64,000 nucleotides of DNA from Trichoplax adhaerens (taxonomy: Eukaryota; Animalia; Placozoa), in the NCBI RefSeq assembly GCF_000150275.1, contig NW_002060945.1, positions 4,451,397 through 4,515,396 of the forward strand. Reading direction: 5' to 3'. The translations under genes were made by a program, and so were the position numbers. The notes below the pieces were generated by a model, which worked only from the letters and a program-made list of their open reading frames with translations, had not been told where the DNA came from and did not search any database. Position 1 is the stretch's first letter. Each line of letters starts with the position of its first letter. Positions 49,318 to 63,977 of this stretch are shown piece by piece.

Positions 49318-50944
<1,627 letters not shown>

Positions 50945-51694
50945 GATTGGTACTGTATCAATTGTCCTATTTTTACGAGAGATGAAAAGTTGATGAGAAA
51001 AAATGGCCATGTAAAGTTTCTGGTAAAATTGCAGGCATACTGGTACTAATTTCAAATGATATTATATTCACTTTTCTACTTGTTTAGTTACTAAGCTTCA
51101 TACAATGATGGCACTATAGCTATCTGACATGAAGAACTAGCAAATGATACAAAGTAATCCAAGTTAATTTTCACAACTACAGTATCCGCTCCACAAGGTA
51201 AAGGTGATCAACTGCTTGTATTGATATTGTCCACTACTGTAGCAATCGGGAGTCTTTTTCACCACAACAAAGACATTATTACAGTATGAAACTTTGCAAT
51301 CAACGCTATACCACTTCTCCATTTCATCTTTATCGCATAAAATAGCAATAGCTTAAAGAAATTAAAGTCTAAATTGCCAATTATGTCAGTAAAAAGTTGT
51401 TTTGCATCCAGAACTACTTACGTGGAATGCGGGAAAGAGGACAAGCGACCGTATACCAGAATGACGCCAGCAATGGTCTGACTTCACTTTATATTGATCG
51501 TTGACGCCGCTGTAAACAATGCATTGGAGCACAAGTCATCCGCTTTTAGCATGACTTGCTTGTGGAGAATTGTTTCATCATCACGCTGTTCATTATTCAA
51601 TTGCGTACTGTGTTTCTGCGCAGCATCCTCAAACCCATGAAAGTCACGAGTTTTTCACGCTTCTGTTGAAGTGCGAAGTGAGACTGTTAGCCGT

Positions 51695-52120
51695 GTTACT
51701 GTACGCATGTACAGTACTGTACATGCGTACAGTACAGTATGCATATTTGAACGGTACAGTACATTCATACAGTACATTCATACAGTACAGTGTACAGTAG
51801 TACTGTACTGTACTGTACTGTAGTAGAAATTCATGGAGTTTCTACAGTACTGTACTGTACTGTACGTAGAGTCTACGATATTCATACTGTACTGTATTCA
51901 TATTACGAGTGCTGTACTGTACAGTACAGTATACTGTATGATAGGGTATGTACTGTACTGTACTGCATGACCTGTAAATCTGTAATTCTCCATAAAAAAT
52001 ATACTGTACAGTACAGTACAGTACAGTACTGTACTGTACTGTAAGAATTTTTTACGCTGGCAATATTCTTTCCATTGACTCAGCAAATATCCAGTACAGT
52101 ACAGTACGTACAGTACAGAA
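51695..52120. repeat. Dense strand-switching TACAG/TACTG pentamer array upstream of cathepsin L
   Basis: For example actgtacagtacagtacagtacagtactgtactgtactgt at ~52003-52042; smaller patches at 55360-55410 and 55620-55695. Confidence 0.9.
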
Positions 52121-55100
52121 TGTCTCGTGTTGCATTGCACGCTGCAGTGAGTGTGTAAATAAGGTAAACAACTCTGGTCAGTCAGCCAGCTCGCGACATG
52201 CACAAGTTATTATTATCCAACATGAATGTCGTCATAACAACGACGATCAAGTAATACTATATTCAAGCTAGTGAAATCGGAGAGCCACCTCTCCCTTTCC
52301 TCTTGCCTTCCAAATTTATAATATATTCATCAAGCAATACATTACTGTACAAAAAATCGGAAATTAAAACAAGAGCGATCATCAGTTGAACTCATGACTT
52401 ACACATGCATCTATCACAAATTTGCGAAGTAATGGGTGGATTGTTGCAGGAGGATCGACGCACAGGTTGTAACGAGATTAGATTAGCAATACTTTGCAAT
52501 GCAGGCATTGTAAAGAAGAATTTCCAAACTACCTAAATAATAAAATCAAATCGAATAGCAGGAATATCAATCACTGCTAGAAACTGAGTAATACTTGTGA
52601 ATTGTAATAACGTGACAGTTGAGGTATAGCCAGGCGCCAGGGCCTGAACAACTATAAATAAATCGACTCTCGATAAACCGATGCTACCAATAGATTGACG
52701 GTATGACAAGCCCATAAATATATATGTCACGATATACTGTATACAGAAAGTAGAAGCCGATTTTTATGTAATACCATCACGGCCAAACGAAGAATAGGAG
52801 GAGAAAACTATGCATACCTCTGAAATCAGCATTAAGCGTCGATATTCCTCGTCGACTTTAAAACGCCGAAAGAACTTTGATAAAAAAGTTTTAAAGCTCT
52901 AAACTGCTAACTCTATAGTCAAGCAGCGTGAAAAGCTACTTGAAAGTTTGGGCGATAATGCTCGGCTACGCGGGTTGTGAACATAAATGCCATATACATA
53001 CTGTAGATATTTTTATGTCAAGTAATAGATTCACACGTTTTCTGCAAAAATACCCGGCTACCGGGCTTATACTGGCTAGTAAAGCATATCGTGGAAATTA
53101 TGTTCCATACAAATAAGACATGCCGGTATTTCCCAAATCATGTCCATGGATCTATACGAAATTAAGATAGATTCGCGTAGTTTACAACGGATTTACCTCT
53201 AAACCCTGAAAAAAGCAGCCTTTTGAATGGTGGAAATAGAGGAAATTTCCTCGAATTCAGTTGAAATTAAATCAACAAGGAAAGCAATACTCGTATCTAT
53301 GGTTGTGTGTGTATATTGCACAAGTGATGATTATAATTGTATACCAATATTAACCTTAATGTTGTGAATACGACTTCAAATTTATACTCGTAAAAGGCCC
53401 TACAAATACATTCATGTCGCAGCTAAATCGAACAATTTGCAATGTACTGCTAAGTTGACTGTATAAAAATAAATGATTGGCGTCATGTTTGAGTTGAATA
53501 ATGCTTGCTAAAGGGTTGTAACATTATTTATTTTTATCCGCAAATGGAAACCTTAAGCCATAACTATACTGTCGTGGATACTTGAGCACAAATTTATTCC
53601 CTTATAATTATCCAAAATGCTCATTATCTCTTGTAACTAACTGTTCGATAAGCTATTGCAGAGATGGTACTAGTTCTCAAAGTAAGATTGCTTTTAAATT
53701 ATTATAACACTTTGTTGTATGATGTGCTTCCTTAGCTTGCATTCTAAAGTACAATCTCTTGAGGATACTGCGCAAACTGAGGTAATTAAGTGACAGAGAG
53801 AAGCGATAATAATTATAAGAATAATGTGCTCATATGATCATTGCGAATAATGGAACAACTTCTATTTTCATTGTAATCTTTACGATTCGGTGCCATTTCG
53901 TTTTTGGCAAAATCTTCCGCAAGACGTTACAATTGCCTTTGCTCCTGGTTAGTCCAGACGAAGCTGTTATGTATGATAGACTGGTAATGTCTAGGAATTA
54001 TTGCGTGATTGACCTAGTATCGCGATAGAGAACATAACGGAAGCTAGCGATTTGATTAAATCTGTTTTATTTTATATTGATGTAAAGAGCGTTGACTGTT
54101 CTACAGCGTATATTTGTAATATTGAGTACAGCCTTTGAGCATCTGTAGACATATACTGTACTAGTCAGCAACATATATCATGTAAATTGAGTAGTAATGC
54201 ATCGATATCATGTTAGCCGAGTGACTGAGCGGGATGGGACAAGTTTATGAGTAGCTGGAAATTGAGTGGACCGATCATTTTATTGGTCATTTTACTAAAC
54301 TGTCATCGTTCACGGTACATCGTACTGTGCACTAGCCCAGGGCAATTAAAATGTCCAGTCAAAAATAGTAGTTGGCGTATTAACTTAGTAGAATTTTCTC
54401 ATTTACTTTTTGTGTGTACATTCCTGAATGACGAGTGGAAAAGGAAGGAAGTCATCGTTCACTGCCATGGTTTGTCTGTCCGTCAAGTTTTCGGCAGATA
54501 CTATCAGGGAATCCTGAGACAAATACACTGTTTGAGAAGTCCTTGGTATTTGTACTGTACAGTACACCAAAGTCAATTATTTTGGATAGCAAAATCAAAA
54601 AATAAATTTGTATATGCTTGTACACCTAAATTCAATGGTATAAGTTTTATGAGGGAATTCCTGCAGATTTTATAATTAGATTGACGCTGTCATTTATCAA
54701 GGAAAATAATCACCCTAGTAGGTTATTGATTTTCCTTGCTGTACTGTACAATATAGTGACTGCGCACAGTGTACAGATTGAGGGTTCTGCTGTATTAGAA
54801 TAAGGAAAGAGAAAGTCTCTTGTATTCGTTCTTGACAAATGAATGACAGTACTGTTGAAAGACAGTTGTACATTGTACAACCAGTGTGGACGGGAAATTT
54901 TCAGTGATTAATGTGAAAATATATACAACTGTTGTGCTTCTTGAACAAATTTTCTATCGAACGATAAGAAAGAATTAATTTAGACTGTACTGTAACAGAC
55001 TCGCCAAGTGGGAGAACTTGGAATCGATATGGCACAGTTACTGTACATTTGAGTGTAGAACAGTAAGCAAAGATTTTGCGCACGAGTACACTGTACACGG

Positions 55101-55965
55101 AGTGTACAGTAGTCAGAAGAGGGGGATTTGCCGTACGCTAAATAAAGCAGACTATGATCCACACTAGAGATCCTTAGAGGAGGGTCTCTAATCCACATCA
55201 CAAACAGTATAGTACAGTAGTCTGTTAGGCCCAAAGTAGATCAATTCTATATGTTCTACGGGTATATACAGTATAAATATTATACAGGAATTTGAAGGAA
55301 ATCCTACTTTGATTTTTAAACGAAGAGTGCCATGGAAAATAGCGATTGATCAGAGTCAGTGTACTGTACAGTACAGTATAACAAGTAATACAAATTAGCT
55401 ACAGTACAGTGTGGACGGGCTAATTTCTATGATTTTTGTGCAAATAGATGGATCTAAATTTATTTTTATTTTTTTGACAAATTTCATATCAGTCGATAGA
55501 GAAAGAGTTCATTTACACGAATCTATCATTAAAATTCACGTACGGCGTTTACTTTCGTCGTAATTATGAATTAAAGCACGCGAGACGCTACAGTACAAAG
55601 TAAAAATGAAGGTTTTGTAACCCTGTACAGTACAGTACTGTACTGTACTGTAGTAGTACTGTAGCTTTCTCCACGACAATTGTACTGTACTACAGCAAGG
55701 AAAACTTGCTGTCATTTTATTTAGGGACACTTAAATATCATCCAATAACGTTATTAAAACCGGAAAACATCCATTGCAACGAGATTGATCATATCCATAG
55801 TGCAAGTAATCTGCCCAGGTTGTAGTCGTGTCATTTCTAGGTATCATTAGTGACTAAAACGAGACTATTTGCAATGGTGAATTCATACTAATCGAGAAAA
55901 AGATTATAGCTGCTCCGATGAAAAGTTGAGATCCTCCTGATAACCTGTTGGCCTCTGTCAACCCA

Positions 55966-58900
55966 ATGGAGAACGCAACCAGCAATGATCCTATTGAAGG
56001 CATTATTTGCCCGGAATGCTTGTCACGATTTGACACCATTGATCATTTACTTTGGCACTTTGAATCGATCCATCCAGAAATCCAAGTATCAGCAACACCT
56101 AGCGATAATGACGATGATTTAATCGATGTCACACACTCCTCTACAGGAGAAGAACAACAATCTCAGGTAATTGAAATAGCTTCCGCAAAGTACCCTTCCA
56201 ACCAATTCCAAGTAGTATTCAACTAATGCATTAAAATCATCCTCTTTCAGTGTACTGTATGTATAGTCACCAGAATACAATCCAATCATAAGTTATAGTT
56301 TAGTTGGAGGCTTAGCCGTCGATTGTCCAAAGTACAGTGCTGTATTTAGCAGGATATTATAAAATACTTAGAAAGCGTCAGCGATCTTGCTATATCAATA
56401 ATCGACTGGATATTTCCCTAGCTTTAGTTGCTACGATAGGCGTCTTTCAAATTCAATGCATCGTGCATAAACGTTATGTATATCGATTTTATTCTAAGTT
56501 TCATAGCGTTAAAACTTGGTAGTTATTCTGTGATCGTTAAGGAAGACATCAATCTGACATTGGATTCAGTTGGTGGGATATACTACTGTAGTTTTGTGAC
56601 TATACTTGACCCAAAACAGCATGCCTTATTTTCGTAACGTCTCCGCCAAATAGCCATAGTTACATTATCCTGCAACTGCTTTGAATGCTTCTCACTGATT
56701 CTATTCTATTTCAATGACACCCAATTGCCATCTCTTTTATTTGGTGGTAATCATTTCCAACGATCTTATCCATGTGTTATCGTTTTATTACTTTGCAATG
56801 CTAAGGACCTAACATGAAATCACAGTTAGGATTTCAATCATGTCCCACTTCTCAAGTGCATGCCACGTTCATACAAGTGTTCACCACTATAAAAACGCTC
56901 TACTTGAGCCACGCGTGTTATATGAGTCTTACATCCATTTCCTTTTACTGCCTAATGAGGCTTAACATTTGAAGTCATCCAGTTTATCGGTATATCTTGA
57001 ATTAGGCTTTACTTTACATTGTAATAATATTTTAAAAACCAATATTATTCCTTAACATCAATTAGCACAGTAGAATGAACGTTATCACAATAGAATAATT
57101 CAATCGTTGTAGGAAATAAAACACAGTTTTTACTGAACTGTGTTGCAATCATCGATAGAATAGAATCTGATTATGACTCTATACTCTACTCGTATTGATT
57201 TGCTATTATTTTACTGTCATCAATGCCCTTCGATGGGTGTTATTACTTTTTTGAGCTAGTACTGTACTTTAGCAAGAGCTTTTCAAAAGTTACAAGCATG
57301 CATTCAATTACAGTAGAATGTACGCGCCATTTTGCCATCCTGACTACGTTTACTCAATCCTTCAACATTTGTAGTATTCGTTCAAATTATTTGCAAATCT
57401 AGTAATGACGCACTACAGTAGATTGTTGCATACCCACTGCGTACAATGATGCAAACCTTCTTTGACTGATTCTGTGCAATTTACTTTGGATGCAATAGAC
57501 GTACCCAAAATCAATCAATACTACCGGTAATCTTTGCTGTACCATCCATGCGATCCTTTAAGTTTAATTTATAAATTGAAATAATATTCCACTATGATTG
57601 CTCATTTGTTTTATTGTCAATAGATTACTGCATACGAACGATACAAATCGGTCGATCAATCTACAGATAACCTTTACTCTATATTGATAATTGCGAAAAC
57701 TAACAATGTTATTTACTCGTATACAAGACTCTTCCTCCTCCGAAAAGTGTCTCAAATCTTATTAGACGCATTATAGCCAGGTAAGCAATGCTAAGCGTGA
57801 ATTGCAGTAGCGTTGAGCGGATTGTAATTAAAAATAGAGTTATCTCAAATAATTTCACAATAAATAGTAAAAAAAAATAACTACAGTATTGCAATTTAGG
57901 TTGTATCGTATGATTTCGTAAGGATCAAATTTTATTATTGAATTAGGGGAAAATATAGATACATTGGTGATTCATATGACTTAGATTTAACTTATATTAC
58001 GGACAGAATTATTGGTAAGTGACGAGATAATCCAATGTCTAAATTTACTGTACATCTTACCTCCAATAGTAACAACGAGTGTTTTTACGTGCTAGGCCTC
58101 TTATGAGTGCTTATTGATTTTAAATTTAAAATGATTAAAGCTATTATACAACCTAAATGCAGTTAGATGCCTAGTAATTAAAATTATATAACCTTGTACT
58201 TGTAAAACCAAAATAGTCATGTCAATACCTGGTGAAGGAATCCATGCCTTATATCGTAATAAAATTGAAGATGTTGTCGGATTACTTAATCACAAACATG
58301 GGAAGAAGTATATCGTATTCAATCTATCCACTGAAACTTATGATTTTAATAAGTTTGACAACCAAGTCTTAGAATTTGGTTGGCCTGATCATACAGCTCC
58401 GCCTTTAGAGAGATTATGCAGGTCAGCTCTTTATTGTTACTCATTAAGAATTACATACTTTTGACTCTTTACAGATCATAACAATAATGCTATTTATGTA
58501 TAGCTTATTTTAGTACAATTAACGTAAGTTTGATGCTTTTTACAGCATTTGTAAATCCATGAAATCGTGGCTAGAATCTGATGATGAAAACGTGGTTGTT
58601 GTACATTGCAAAGTAATCTATTGTACTCATTATCCCGTCTATGTCTTGTACATATTTTGTAGCACAGCTATACATACATTTAGCATAAATCAAGCCATTT
58701 ATGTTAAGTTAATGGATAAACATTTCATAGAATTTGGCATCGTTTGGCTTCGTAAAATACTGATGCTATACAATGTTAATATAAGTCGTTATTATATAAC
58801 TATATTGAACAGGGTGGTAAAGGAAGAACTGGTGTCGTTATAGCTGCTTACTTGCAGTATTCCAAAGTTTGCTCAACGTAAGGATCAATTACGGCCTAGT

Positions 58901-61900
58901 AGTTAACATATTGTACTCAATAAATATAGCAAAATAATCACCTTAGATACAATCACTCTTTCTTTTATCGAATATGTCTACATTCCAACGATATCCATCT
59001 TTATTAATACAGGCCTGAAGCTGCTTTGGAAGTTTTCAAGATGAAACGATTCCATAATAAAAATGGTGGTGTAACTCAGCCGTCCCAAATTAGGTAAAAT
59101 TTTTTCTATCTTTGGCGGTAAAGCAACTTTCAATAATGCATCCGGATTTATTGCCAAATATTTCTTTACATTAAAACTGTTAATTGTAATCTTTTCTCTT
59201 GCTTTATTCAAGATATGTTGGCTACTTTCATGATTTTATTTCTGGAAAAATGAACCTGCATAAAAGGTAAGTAAAAGCAAATTAAATCAAATGATACCAT
59301 GGCTAACTAGCCTTGCTTAAAGAGAAACATTTTTGATTAGCTTTGAAAGTTTTTGTATAGCTTTTAGTATTGCGATGTTTTGTAAATTACAATTATCTCG
59401 CAGTATTAGGGTATCTTGCTGACTACTGTTGATGAGATACTATATAATCATACATTTTTATTGTTATGGCAGCCCTGTCTATTTGCGACAAGTAGTTATC
59501 CATGGTGTGCCAAATTACGAACATAAAGGTAGTAAACTTAATCAATAATTCATAAACTTACAGCTGGCAATTTTAATTCTTAACAATACTTACTCTAATA
59601 TAGGCTGTCGCCCTTATGTTACTATCATGGACAACCATTCCGAACACCCGTACGAGACTGAAACTCAGTAAGGAAGATAATATTCTATATTCATAATTGC
59701 CACTGGTTTACTAACGACAATTTGGAATAAGTGACTTAGAACTTTAAGGCTGTGAATACTGCATTTCTTTAATAGGATTATTACAGAAAGGGATACGACA
59801 ATTCGTTTTAACTTTCCTCATAATTTTAAACTGTTCGGTGATGTTATTGTAAGTGCTAGCATTGATTTAGTTCGCGCTACTGAGTACCGTATTAGTGGCC
59901 AGTTTAGACATAAGTACAAAGTATATAAAGTGGTTGTATTCTAATTTCTCGTTAATATGATTTCTTGGAATAACAGGTCCGCTGTTATCATCGAAAATCA
60001 CGTGCAAGTCCAGAAATAATTTTTAGATGTCAATTCCACACTGCAATGCTTTCAAAATTTCCATTGGTGTTAGGAAAGCATGAATTAGACGATGCGCGCA
60101 AAGACAAAAGATTTGCCAGTAACATAAAAGTTGAATTTAATCTAGTCCCGTCAGATATCTCTGAAACTGGTGCTGAAATTTTTTACTTTTGGGAACGCCA
60201 TTGCGTACCTAATCATGATCTATAACTTTTCTGCTTGCAAAATTCTTTACTATTTACGTATGGCTATTTTATAATAATTAACAATAGATGCACCCAATGA
60301 TGACAGCAATAAAAGAAATTCGTTATTATATTCTCTCGGAATCTCTCACGAAGAAGGTACAGGTAAGCATAATAAAAATACAGTATATTTAAATATTAGA
60401 ATATATTACACCTATGAAATGTGTTACTGAATTACACGTACGTTTGTTATTTCTGCTACGGTTTTTTGACTATAATATAAGATATCGACCAAAATTCGAA
60501 ATCAGCTAATAGTGAAGGTAAGTTATTGCCATATTAGTTTTTACAATATAGGTACGGATTTATTATTATTAAGGTTCTGCTTAAATTTTCAGAAAATACC
60601 AACAGTGAAATTGCAATAAAGAATGAAATTGAGCGCTTAATCTCGTTCGAAGAGCCAAATATCGATTCGTTTTCAGAAACTGTTAGTCTTCAGAATAAAA
60701 TCCAGAATAGTGGATCGTTACAATACTAACTAGATATACGAAGGATCTCACTACGGCTTACATTACCCTTAATAGCAGTGCAATATTTATAACCAGTTCC
60801 ATAGCTTAAGTATTGAAAATGACCACGCAATCATGTTAAACTTGTCAATTATGCATGCAGGTTTAACAACTTAAATAAGATGATACTTTTGTCATGAAGA
60901 AAAAGGGATTTATTGTATAGACTTTACCCTAAATTTATCAAAAATATCAGCTGCCTTATATTCGTTACAATTTTCTGCAATAGTTGATATTCTTTATAGA
61001 CAACTATTGATTTTAATTCGTATGGTAATCAAGTTCATATTAGACTAGTAATACGCATTATGTAACCTCTAAAATGTTGTTTTAAATGTTTGCAATTCTA
61101 GAGCGATGCTCACGTAGCTGCTGTTTTGCAATCGTGTTCAAGCGAGCCTTTGAAACCATCTCGGACTTCGATTAGCAATGACAATAATAACACTATTTCT
61201 GCGTCTACACATGTAAAAGATGTGAATTCAGATAATAGGTTATTTAATCATCGCCAATTCCAGTCTAATCTTTTGAACGAAACTGGATTGTCCATGATAT
61301 CTGGATCGGTTACCAAACGAAATATTAACCCATTTCGCCGCAATTATGATAAAATAGAAGACACAGGCACACTCGATAGCACTAAGCCATTTTATTTTCC
61401 AGATGGCTTTTCCGCAGCCACGACGACGTACAACCCAAATAATCCTTTTCTGGTTGATGAAAGTGCTGACCAAAGTACTAGAAGTTCATCAAGTAGTTTT
61501 TCGCACGGACAACATTCACAATCAGATGCGATTTCAAGCGATGGCTACGATCACTTATACTCACTGCCAATTTGGAACTCTCCATATAGCCCGATAGCTC
61601 AAATAAATAGCAGCGATTCGAAAAGGTTAGTTAGAAAAGTTTTAATTTTAGTTCTTAATAATCTGGCCATCCTTTACGTCCAATTTTATCTTTGTATCAA
61701 ATAGACACAGTGGTAGCTTTGTTTGTGGAGAGAACAGTTCAAATTGGAGCAATTCGCTATCAGAACCTGTTACTGAACTAGATAGATCTCTTTCCAATAA
61801 TGATTTGGTGCGTTCTAAATCGGGTGATATAAATTATAACATCAGTGATGGAGTTGATAACTCCTATGGTAGTGAGCAATACAAGTTGGAGAAAATGATG

Positions 61901-63977
61901 ACAGACGATAATAATAATAAAAAGGCATCAACAAAGAATGACAACCAACTAACCGAAGATCGGTCAATAAGATCGTCCGATAGATTTGATTATGAAATGA
62001 AAAATGATGTGCACAATAATAAGAATCAACTGAATACTTCGCAATTAAATGAACGAGATCATCGTGAAAATTCTTCACATAGTATGAATAATTTGCTAAG
62101 AGAACTCAATGTAGAATTTGTAGATCTTCCTAGGATAGAACAAGAAAATAATCGATCCAGATCTAGAGGTAAGTTTTCTAGCAGATTTCATTTGTTCTTA
62201 ATCATTTCCTGAAACCACTATGCCAGGAATATTTTAAATGTTATTTCTGCTATTGCAGCAATTTCGTTACCAATTGTTTGGAGTCAGAAATCTAAAACTG
62301 ATAATATACTGGATACACAAGATATGTCGATGCTCGTGAAAAATGCGTTGAACTGGTACAAACCAACGTTGAGCCAAAAAGAGGGTAGGAATGTTAATGA
62401 GCTCTTTTCCAGTTCACTTATGCAATTTAGTACTTATATGGATCGCTTAGCAATTAACCTTTAAAAACTTGTTTCATGATCAATTACTAACACCGGAAAA
62501 GTTGTTGTTTTCATATTTCATTTACATTCTGTATGTCTTGCCATTTTAGTCACGGATATCCTAGGTTCATCTTCGATAGGTTCGTTTGTTGTCCGTGATA
62601 GCACGAGTTTTAAGGATGCCTTTGACTTAGCGATAAAATCAGGTAATGATAAGATATATACTGTCTTTAAAGTAATTAAATCCAACAACTAGTAACTAAG
62701 TAATACACTTGTAAGGGCTCACATAAATGCACAAGTATATAATGTTTCATTTTATATGTTTCCAAATATATTACAACAGTTTTTGTATTATCTTGTTAGG
62801 TTTCAACAAAACAGAGCATTTCTTAATTGAGCCTGTGGAACTTGGTGTACAAATAAAAGGATACGACAACGAGCCTGCCTTCTGTTAGTAGTAGATAATG
62901 TCATTGAATTTCATTGTTTAATTTGAAAAGTAATAAAGAATTCATTAAATATTTATACATGAGATATATTTTGGATTTACCGTATAACTATAGGCAGCTT
63001 ATCGGCTCTCATACAGCAGCATACACTGACCAGTTTAGCTCTTCCATGCAAATTATCAAGACCTGAATCAGGTACGGAATTTAGATTAGTAATATTCGAT
63101 GACTGTAATTTGGAAACATATCATCATCTCTACGATTTAAGTTTTATTTTTAACTGTTCTACTTTGTAGCTAATAATGTGATAGAGTCGAAGTTCAAACA
63201 TTATGGAAGTCCAAGTCACATAGAGCGGACGCCTGAAAGGCTCCATCAAGGAATCGGCACGTTTACTATTTATAAATACATTAAGAATAAATCGCATAAA
63301 ATATATATTTGTGTTTCTAGTCATTTTTATTTTCTTAACTGTGCTATGTTTTTTTATACAGCATTTAATGTTATGTATCTGGGGTCAATAAATGTCGAAC
63401 GTGTAAACGATTCAGAGACTTTAAACTTGTGTATAAGCAAATTTATGTCTTATTCATCACGTGATGAACCGATTCCTGTTAGTTTTAAAGCATCACTGGA
63501 GGGCGTAACTCTGACAGACGTCAACAAAATGTAAGTAGCATAAAGTAAAACATGGCAACGATGACAGATTTCTCATTTTACAATTGCAACCGTTATGAAA
63601 TTTAGACAATTCCTTCGGTTATTCTTCCCGATACACTCAATAAGTTATTGTGCAGTTGATCCTAACGAGAAAAGGTATGAAGTAATATCGACACGAAGAT
63701 AAAATTTTGTAATTTTTTGCAACACTTATATCTTTATACATACTTGATAATTTATCATTCCTTTGAATCATGCTGTAGGCAATCTGATGTCTTAAATCAA
63801 GCGACAAATAATATAAATCCAAAAAAATTACAAGCTTCGCAGCATTTTGGATTTGTTACAAAGGATGTATCACAACTTTTTGATACTTGTTGGTTATTTA
63901 CGGATATAGATCCATCAGAATCCTCATCGACTATAGCTGAGCTTGTTAATTTCCTATTGCCTTTTCATACAAGTTGA
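55966..63977 (+). CDS. TNS: Tensin-family protein: (C2H2 finger)-PTEN-like phosphatase-C2-low complexity-SH2-PTB
   Basis: Exons 55966-56166, 57728-57780, 57947-58014, ~58217-58421, ~58546-58612, 58813-58877, ~59012-59092 and further exons to stop TGA 63975-63977. Motifs DLDLTYITDRII, FNLS, GWPDHTAPPLE, HCKGGKGRTG, PSQIRYVGYF, IFRCQFHT, WYKPTLS, GSFVVRDSTSF, HFLIE, LALPCKL, GVTLTD, ISYCAVDP, FGFV. Linkage of the first exon is inferred from phase only. Confidence 0.92.

What the first reader, a model, noticed from the sequence alone, without database searches (positions are those of the whole stretch)
55966..57780. Tensin apparently begins with an EEA1/Rabenosyn-5-type (Rab5-binding) C2H2 zinc finger
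Seen: the exon at 55966-56166 encodes EGIICPECLSRFDTIDHLLWHFESIH (55996-56073), has an upstream in-frame stop at 55927, and ends at a phase-0 donor. That donor fits the phase-0 acceptor of exon 57728-57780, which in turn fits the phosphatase exons. Known: the motif aligns gap-free to the EEA1 Rab5/Rab22-binding finger EGFICPQCMKSLGSADELFKHYEAVH, with E, I and P kept and F>I, M>L, Y>F at the contact positions. Vertebrate tensins have a C1 domain or nothing at this position. Inference: a domain architecture I do not know from any tensin, which could recruit it to early endosomes instead of, or besides, focal adhesions.
Basis: partly seen in the sequence, partly recalled or inferred. Interest (0 to 1): 0.85.

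Follow-up and report, generated by a model that had tools for sequence, protein, structure and literature searches.

The report
Tensin's overlooked ancestral EEA1-type zinc finger
The first coding exon of the Trichoplax tensin gene really does encode a zinc finger of the kind that lets EEA1 and Rabenosyn-5 bind the endosomal switch protein Rab5, and the same finger heads tensins from choanoflagellates to sharks, so it is an old and apparently undescribed part of this cell-adhesion protein and not a placozoan oddity.

Summary
Observation confirmed. Transcript contigs from three runs in three studies splice 56166>57728 with GT..AG ends and continue into the phosphatase exons. The public model TRIADDRAFT_54505 starts with exactly this exon.

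The finger is of the EEA1/Rabenosyn-5 class:
- A profile of tensin fingers hits the EEA1 finger (PDB 3MJH) at E=4e-8. That is 10 bits above the best single-stretch generic C2H2 match.
- In the Trichoplax genome the same profile finds only tensin, the EEA1 orthologue and the Rabenosyn-5 orthologue.

The same N-terminal finger heads tensin-like proteins of choanoflagellates, three sponge classes, a second placozoan, anthozoans, a tick, a hemichordate and amphioxus. A diverged form heads shark and ray tensin-3. It is therefore ancestral to the family.

It was not seen in the bony-vertebrate or mollusc isoforms sampled. Pfam gives it no family, and I found no paper describing it.

Rab5 binding is inferred, not shown. 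The positions matching EEA1 F41/I42, which are needed for Rab5 binding, are I13/I14 here. The scan had not reported this before on other DNA.

The parts
55685..55965 (+). 5' UTR of the tensin mRNA. It holds two short upstream ORFs (ATG 55874, 5 codons; ATG 55918, 3 codons) and the in-frame stop at 55927.
   Evidence: Transcript contigs begin at 55685, 55700 and 55730. uORFs and stop.
55966..56166 (+). Coding exon 1 (67 aa): start Met, finger, acidic linker. Phase-0 GT donor at 56167.
   Evidence: Identical to residues 1-67 of TRIADDRAFT_54505.
55996..56073 (+). EEA1/Rabenosyn-5-class C2H2 finger, E11-H36. Zinc ligands are C15, C18, H31 and H36, with spacing C-x2-C-x12-H-x4-H.
   Evidence: The AlphaFold model shows a beta-beta-alpha fold with mean pLDDT of 82-91 per 10-residue block over residues 11-40.
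56167..57727 (+). Intron 1 (1561 nt, GT..AG). I saw no C1-domain exon in it.
   Evidence: Joint. No C1-like ORF among the ORFs listed.
57728..57780 (+). Exon 2 (TLPPPKSVSNLIRRIIA, plus 2 nt).
57947..59266 (+). Exons 3-8 of the PTEN-like phosphatase domain: 57947-58014, 58217-58421, 58546-58612, 58813-58877, 59013-59093, 59213-59266. The intact P-loop HCKGGKGRTG spans 58604-58833 across an intron.
59977..60162 (+). Main exon of the PTEN-type C2 domain.
   Evidence: tblastn of sponge and coral tensins. Pfam PTEN_C2 E=6.5e-26 on P0320.
62558..63064 (+). SH2-domain exons.
   Evidence: Pfam SH2 E=3.4e-7 on P0320.
63358..63977 (+). PTB-domain exons and the end of the CDS. The last codon ends at 63974, followed by the stop.
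   Evidence: Pfam PTB is weak, E=0.009.

Best explanation
The exon at 55966-56166 is the true first coding exon of the single Trichoplax tensin gene (public model TRIADDRAFT_54505). The domain order is finger, PTEN-like phosphatase with an intact HCKGGKGRTG loop, C2, long linker, SH2, PTB.

The finger is a single C-x2-C-x12-H-x4-H C2H2 finger of the EEA1/Rabenosyn-5 class. It is the ancestral N-terminal module of the tensin family and dates to before the split of choanoflagellates and animals. Most lineages have it followed by a C1 domain. Trichoplax and the sponge Oscarella have it without C1. In many animals it sits on one of several alternative first exons. It was not seen in the bony-vertebrate isoforms sampled.

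Inferred mechanism: the finger binds the GTP form of a Rab5-subfamily GTPase (Rab5, Rab21 or Rab22), as the EEA1 finger does. This would bring a catalytically competent PTEN-like phosphatase and a phosphotyrosine/integrin adaptor onto early endocytic membranes.

Shown: the splicing, the class of the finger, and its distribution. Inferred: the Rab partner and endosomal targeting.
For: - Splice 56166>57728 in transcript contigs of three studies.
- Exon-by-exon open frame.
- The public model is identical.
- The EEA1 finger 3mjh_B is the top PDB hit for the tensin-finger profile: E=4.2e-8, 35.7 bits in a single stretch. The best other hit matched in a single stretch scores 25.8 bits, and individual fingers of generic arrays score about 13-14 bits.
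- In the own genome the profile finds only tensin, the EEA1 orthologue (FYVE 12 kb downstream) and the Rabenosyn-5 orthologue (FYVE and Rbsn domains downstream). The next hit is at E=0.69.
- The finger sits at residues ~5-50 of tensin-like proteins of Monosiga, Hartaetosiga, Oscarella, Sycon, Oopsacas, Nematostella, Actinia, Porites, Pocillopora, Oculina, Ornithodoros, Ptychodera and Branchiostoma. A diverged form sits in shark and ray tensin-3.
- A second placozoan keeps the exon, with all zinc ligands and the motif EGFICP, at 44% overall identity.
- EEA1 F41A/I42A is impaired in Rab5 binding (PMC10397212). The matching positions are F-I in most non-bilaterian tensins and I-I in Trichoplax.
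- The AlphaFold model is a confident beta-beta-alpha finger.
Against: - No binding or localisation data exist for any tensin finger.
- Trichoplax has Ile where EEA1 has Phe41.
- In bilaterian tensins the E-G-F-I motif has decayed (amphioxus LGSV, Ptychodera SSFT, tick AAFV, sharks RRFA). Either the partner is not strictly conserved or the constraint is loose.
- Tensin lacks the FYVE domain that accompanies the finger in EEA1 and Rabenosyn-5.
- Structure search cannot separate the EEA1 finger from DNA-binding fingers. All hits have E>0.6 and 3mjh_D ranks 6th.
Confidence: 0.55

Rival explanations
1. The finger is a real, conserved N-terminal domain of tensin, but its partner is not a Rab5-family GTPase. 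It could bind another protein, serve in autoinhibition or dimerisation, or bind nucleic acid or lipid.
For: - The EGFI motif has decayed in bilaterian tensins while the zinc ligands, F22 and L28 stay.
- Tensin fingers carry their own signature, HW after the first His, which is not seen in the EEA1 or Rabenosyn-5 fingers.
- There is no FYVE partner domain.
- The fold is generic C2H2.
Against: - The residues that lift the score above generic fingers are those of the EEA1 N-terminal strand (EGFICPxC), including the two whose mutation impairs Rab5 binding.
- In the whole Trichoplax genome only the two known Rab5 effectors share the signature.
Confidence: 0.35
2. The finger exon is a recent placozoan acquisition, by exon shuffling from EEA1 or Rabenosyn-5. 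This would make it the lineage-specific novelty the first reader implied.
For: Trichoplax has EEA1 and Rabenosyn-5 genes with related fingers that could have served as donors.
Against: - The same finger stands in the same N-terminal position in tensins of choanoflagellates, sponges, cnidarians and deuterostomes.
- The tensin-finger profile, which includes the Trichoplax row, scores the tensin exon at E=3e-19 but the Trichoplax EEA1 and Rabenosyn-5 exons only at about 1e-5.
Confidence: 0.02
3. The exon is transcribed but not translated as part of tensin. It would be 5' leader, with translation starting downstream, or an annotation artefact.
For: Two short uORFs precede the ATG. The single-sequence AlphaFold model was poor, with pLDDT 57.
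Against: - The frame is open from ATG 55966 through all the joints checked.
- The next in-frame Met lies inside the phosphatase domain.
- The finger ORF is kept as the N-terminus across phyla and in a second placozoan at 44% identity, with all ligands intact.
Confidence: 0.03

Closest known systems
EEA1 N-terminal C2H2 zinc finger (PDB 3MJH, complex with Rab5A-GTP)
   Same: Both are single fingers near the N-terminus with identical spacing C-x2-C-x12-H-x4-H and the motif EGF/I-I-C-P-x-C before and in the first strand. It is the top PDB hit of the tensin-finger profile (E=4.2e-8). The Trichoplax exon alone gives E=3e-4.
   Different: EEA1 continues into a long coiled coil and a C-terminal FYVE domain, whereas tensin continues into C1 or PTP-C2...SH2-PTB. 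Trichoplax has Ile for Phe41, Leu for Met47 and Phe for Tyr60. Most tensin fingers have Trp after the first His.
Rabenosyn-5 (RBSN/ZFYVE20) N-terminal C2H2 finger
   Same: The finger sits at the extreme N-terminus directly after the start Met, as in tensin. The Trichoplax orthologue (MEADMKEGFLCPECKK...) is one of only two other own-genome hits of the tensin-finger profile.
   Different: It is followed by FYVE and Rbsn Rab-binding helices and has no phosphatase, SH2 or PTB.
Vertebrate tensin-2 (C1-TEN) and the long tensin-1/-3 isoforms
   Same: They share the PTP-C2...SH2-PTB body and have an N-terminal zinc-binding module encoded on upstream exons.
   Different: Their module is a C1 domain, preceded in bony vertebrates by MGCTVSFICCED... 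or other leaders. Only cartilaginous-fish tensin-3 isoforms keep a finger before the C1, and it is diverged. Trichoplax has the finger and no C1.
Tensin-like proteins of non-bilaterians and choanoflagellates (for example Oscarella P0009, Nematostella XP tensin isoform X2 P0293, Monosiga XP_001750585 P0010)
   Same: They carry the same finger at the same place. Oscarella has the same finger-to-PTP layout without C1.
   Different: Cnidarian and choanoflagellate proteins insert a C1 domain between the finger and PTP. Choanoflagellate fingers have 2-3 extra residues in the hairpin, and Pfam found no PTB in the Monosiga protein.

Membership tests
Tensin family | PTEN-like phosphatase domain directly followed by a PTEN-type C2 domain | tested here: met
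   On P0320, which is identical to the window gene: Pfam Y_phosphatase E=4.5e-8 and PTEN_C2 E=6.5e-26. Exons mapped.
Tensin family | C-terminal SH2 domain followed by a PTB domain | tested here: met
   SH2 E=3.4e-7. PTB is weak in Pfam (E=0.009, below the cut-off), but it aligns to the PTB region of coral tensin.
Tensin family | Closest relatives are annotated animal tensins | tested here: met
   Searches with the PTP exon and with Oscarella and amphioxus tensins return tensins. P0320 is listed among them.
EEA1/Rabenosyn-5-class Rab5-binding C2H2 finger | Single N-terminal finger with spacing C-x2-C-x12-H-x4-H | tested here: met
   C15, C18, H31, H36. Beta-beta-alpha model.
EEA1/Rabenosyn-5-class Rab5-binding C2H2 finger | Sequence closer to the EEA1/RBSN fingers than to generic C2H2 fingers | tested here: met
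   3mjh_B is the top PDB hit, 10 bits above the best other hit matched in a single stretch. The own-genome search finds only tensin, EEA1 and RBSN.
EEA1/Rabenosyn-5-class Rab5-binding C2H2 finger | Hydrophobic pair equivalent to EEA1 Phe41-Ile42, needed for Rab5 binding | tested here: inconclusive
   Trichoplax has Ile13-Ile14. A second placozoan and most non-bilaterian tensins have Phe-Ile. Bilaterian tensins vary. Whether Phe to Ile is tolerated is unknown.
EEA1/Rabenosyn-5-class Rab5-binding C2H2 finger | GTP-dependent binding to Rab5/Rab22 | not testable with these tools
EEA1 / Rabenosyn-5 proteins (as whole proteins) | FYVE domain in the same polypeptide | tested here: not met
   No FYVE hit in P0320 or in five other finger-bearing tensins. 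Tensin shares the finger only and is not a member of either protein family.

The most novel reading that the evidence does not exclude
Tensin began as a Rab5-subfamily effector. The EEA1-type finger would be its original membrane-targeting device, placing an active PTEN-like phosphatase and an SH2-PTB adaptor on endocytic carriers of integrins or tyrosine-phosphorylated receptors. On this reading, the C1 domain and the Met-Gly-Cys N-terminal leaders of bony-vertebrate tensins (a possible lipidation site, untested) are later replacements for that function. The known links of mammalian tensins to receptor and integrin trafficking would then be the remnant of an ancestral endosomal role.
Probability: 0.3. 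Interest if true: 0.8.

Novelty: new variant of a known kind. Interest (0 to 1): 0.62.

Why it matters
Tensins are described from mammals as focal and fibrillar-adhesion proteins with a PTP-C2 head and an SH2-PTB tail. A conserved finger of the Rab5-effector type at the very N-terminus, in lineages from choanoflagellates to sharks, means the ancestral protein had one more domain than the textbook one.

It gives a concrete and cheaply testable link between the adhesion/phosphotyrosine machinery and the early endocytic Rab system at the origin of animals. It also adds a third protein family to the two (EEA1, Rabenosyn-5) I know to carry this finger.

Pfam has no model that detects the finger, so a family model would be easy to build.

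Tried and rejected
- The single-sequence AlphaFold model of exon 1 was poor (pLDDT 57). It was replaced by a 9-row alignment model.
- Foldseek against the PDB cannot tell the EEA1 finger from DNA-binding fingers. I dropped it as a discriminator.
- The ESM Atlas gave only generic C2H2 clusters.
- Pfam on exon 1 gave only sub-threshold C2H2 families: FBX41, SUZ12, ADNP.
- The search for homologous proteins restricted to the 45-residue finger region found only four coral proteins, because it needs shared 5-mers. I surveyed through the PTP region instead and scanned N-termini locally.
- The own-genome search with the single exon found only itself. The profile was needed.
- Mishra et al. 2010 (PMC2890723) is not held, so only F41/I42 could be sourced.
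- The look-up of encoding contigs had no record for the Porites and Branchiostoma proteins, so I did not compare exon structure there.
- A placozoan-specific exon-shuffling origin was considered and rejected on the distribution.
- I did not build a joined spliced protein myself. The frame was read exon by exon. The only full-length protein used was the public model P0320, returned by a search.
- I searched no mammalian genomic DNA for a finger exon.

Full report
**What is in the sequence**

The window is AT-rich animal DNA. An earlier scan note had named the genome as Trichoplax. Here the NCBI protein TRIADDRAFT_54505 (P0320), returned by a search, contains exon 1 exactly and matches the other mapped exons at 98-100%.

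The stretch 55927-56166 reads TGA, then 12 codons, then ATG (55966), then 66 further codons ending ...EEQQSQ, followed by GT. Residues 11-36 (55996-56073) are EGIICPECLSRFDTIDHLLWHFESIH, a C-x2-C-x12-H-x4-H finger.

**Is the exon spliced to tensin?**

Yes. I laid contigs of four public runs on 54000-59300. In X5 (RNA-Seq on record), X8 and X13, which come from three studies, one contig begins at 55685, 55700 or 55730 and runs to 56166. It then jumps to 57728-57780 and on through 57947-58014, 58217-58421, 58546-58612, 58813-58877, 59013-59093 and 59213-59266. Every joint has GT..AG ends. X4 covers introns and intergenic DNA without joints and so behaves as DNA.

Reading exon by exon with the split codons, the frame stays open from ATG 55966 into the phosphatase domain. 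The P-loop is HCK|GGKGRTG. I did not build the joined protein myself. The public model P0320 came back from a search. Its first 130 residues read the same as my exon-by-exon translation, and it was used by id.

Pfam on P0320 gives PTP, PTEN_C2 (E=6.5e-26), SH2 (E=3.4e-7) and a weak PTB. It gives no family for the finger. I saw no C1 exon in intron 1.

**What kind of finger is it?**

- Exon 1 alone hits the EEA1 finger of PDB 3MJH in one stretch (E=3e-4, 24 bits). Generic finger arrays reach similar totals only by summing several weak fingers.
- A profile of six tensin fingers, taken by reference from the window and five loci (A1), puts 3mjh_B first. It scores E=4.2e-8 and 35.7 bits in one stretch. 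The best other hit matched in a single stretch has 25.8 bits, and individual fingers of generic arrays score about 13-14 bits.
- The same profile run over the whole Trichoplax assembly finds four places.
  - Tensin, at E=3e-19.
  - C1414:9859898-9859993 (GFICPQCM..., E=1.8e-5), with a FYVE domain 12 kb downstream. This is the EEA1 orthologue.
  - C1411:1486607-1486702 (MEADMKEGFLCPECKK..., E=4.7e-5), with FYVE and Rbsn domains downstream on the same strand. This is the Rabenosyn-5 orthologue.
  - A fourth hit at noise level, E=0.69.

So in this genome the signature marks exactly the two known Rab5 effectors and tensin.

With a 9-row alignment, AlphaFold gives a beta-beta-alpha finger with mean pLDDT of 82-91 per 10-residue block over residues 11-40. 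Foldseek confirms a C2H2 fold but cannot rank the EEA1 finger above DNA-binding fingers (3mjh_D ranks 6th, rmsd 1.1 A).

**Is it peculiar to Trichoplax?**

No. A search of 1.84 billion representatives with the PTP exon gave 150 tensin-like proteins. Ten of the 38 that are 700 aa or longer begin with the same finger at about residues 5-50. Names place the finger-bearing proteins as follows:

- Choanoflagellates: Monosiga brevicollis (XP_001750585) and Hartaetosiga gracilis.
- Sponges: Oscarella pearsei, Sycon ciliatum and Oopsacas minuta.
- Anthozoans: Nematostella, Actinia, Porites, Pocillopora and Oculina.
- Other bilaterians: the tick Ornithodoros, the hemichordate Ptychodera and Branchiostoma.

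Several of these are single transcript contigs with one ORF running from the finger through tensin (L002, L003, L006).

A second, divergent placozoan contig (L013) keeps the exon. It reads MERSTSEDRYEDEGFICPACFIKFDDDDQLFSHYELNH...QQSQ|GT and is 44% identical overall, with every ligand and EGFICP intact. Its PTP exon is 91% identical.

Shark and ray tensin-3 isoforms begin M..RRFACPACLVVFCNLEEMHFHSKLFH. This has the same spacing and position, lies before the C1 domain, and aligns to anthozoan fingers.

The bony-vertebrate isoforms sampled begin MGCTVSFICCED... or with other leaders followed by C1. The mollusc and spider isoforms sampled lack the finger. Because alternative first exons are common, absence from an isoform list is weak evidence of loss.

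The 60% consensus across 24 lineages is GFICPxC..VxF.....L..H...FH. The neighbouring residues are E before the GF and W after the first His in most lineages. Choanoflagellate fingers carry 2-3 extra hairpin residues.

**How it most likely works**

In EEA1 the finger is the N-terminal Rab5-GTP binding site (PMC5902227), and F41A/I42A impairs Rab5 binding (PMC10397212). These positions are F-I in most non-bilaterian and choanoflagellate tensins and I-I in Trichoplax.

I therefore take the finger as a Rab5-subfamily binding site. It would bring tensin onto early endocytic membranes. Tensin here is a phosphatase with an intact CX5R loop (as in nearly all finger-bearing lineages except chelicerates) plus an SH2-PTB adaptor.

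This step is inferred. Four points argue for caution:
- the Phe-to-Ile change in Trichoplax;
- the decay of the E-G-F-I motif in bilaterian tensins;
- the lack of a FYVE partner domain;
- the tensin-specific Trp after the first His.

I give the structural and evolutionary part about 0.9 and Rab binding about 0.5.

**Comparison with what is known, and novelty**

The gene model with the finger is already in NCBI, UniRef and EukProt, named only 'uncharacterized protein TRIADDRAFT_54505'. RefSeq isoforms of other animals also include the finger.

I found no description of a finger in tensin. Searches on tensin with Trichoplax, EEA1/C2H2/Rab5, Monosiga/SH2/zinc finger, and choanoflagellate/domain architecture returned none. 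Neither did a TNS1 domain review, a phosphotyrosine-domain review or an adhesome-evolution preprint. Pfam does not detect it. The paper library covers open-access papers only, so a description elsewhere cannot be excluded.

I class the finding as a new variant of a known kind: a known family with an overlooked ancestral domain, and a third carrier of the EEA1-type finger.

**Limits**

- Contigs cannot give expression levels or exact 5' ends.
- I searched no mammalian genomic DNA.

Noticed in passing
window 55623-55663 (also 51697-52043): A (CTGTA)n microsatellite lies just upstream of the 5' end of the tensin transcript contigs. Very many unrelated contigs pile up there, with odd joints between about 55380 and 55624. 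This fits an earlier scan note on CAGTA/TACTG microsatellites near the 5' ends of genes.
   Followed up: partly
window 55685 / 56281-57129: The X5 transcript contig carries 849 nt of intron 1 in the opposite orientation, joined to 55685. This may be an assembly chimera or an antisense RNA in intron 1.
   Followed up: no
window 56104-56130; L013:457-663: An acidic patch DD[DE]L[IM]DV after the finger is kept in both placozoans, although the rest of the linker has diverged. It may be a short linear motif. Unexplained.
   Followed up: no
proteins P0213-P0290: Long tensin-1 and tensin-3 isoforms of bony vertebrates, and some of sharks, begin MGCTVSFICCED... From memory this resembles a myristoylation/palmitoylation leader; I did not test it. 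In sharks it looks like an alternative first exon to the finger exon, since both continue into the shared ...PEELVSSSHTF C1 exon.
   Followed up: partly
window 58604-58833: The tensin P-loop is intact (HCKGGKGRTG), unlike vertebrate tensin-1 (HNKGNRGR). Among the proteins fetched, finger-bearing lineages keep CX5R, except chelicerates, which have HSKGDKGR. Counts are inflated by isoforms.
   Followed up: partly
G000:C1414:9859898-9871931 and G000:C1411:1481492-1486702: These are the Trichoplax EEA1 and Rabenosyn-5 orthologues, located through their fingers plus FYVE and Rbsn domains.
   Followed up: partly
window ~49600-51055, minus strand: A cathepsin-L-like cysteine protease gene ([11 protein letters not shown]...) is the upstream neighbour, divergently oriented.
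   Followed up: no
window 55874 and 55918: There are two very short uORFs (5 and 3 codons) in the tensin 5' UTR.
   Followed up: no
L004 (ENA ERZ20067936) and P0307-P0315: A group of about 1006-aa finger-PTP-C2-SH2 proteins in which Pfam found no PTB. P0016 is encoded by one uninterrupted 3-kb ORF on L004. One member is from the glass sponge Oopsacas minuta.
   Followed up: no
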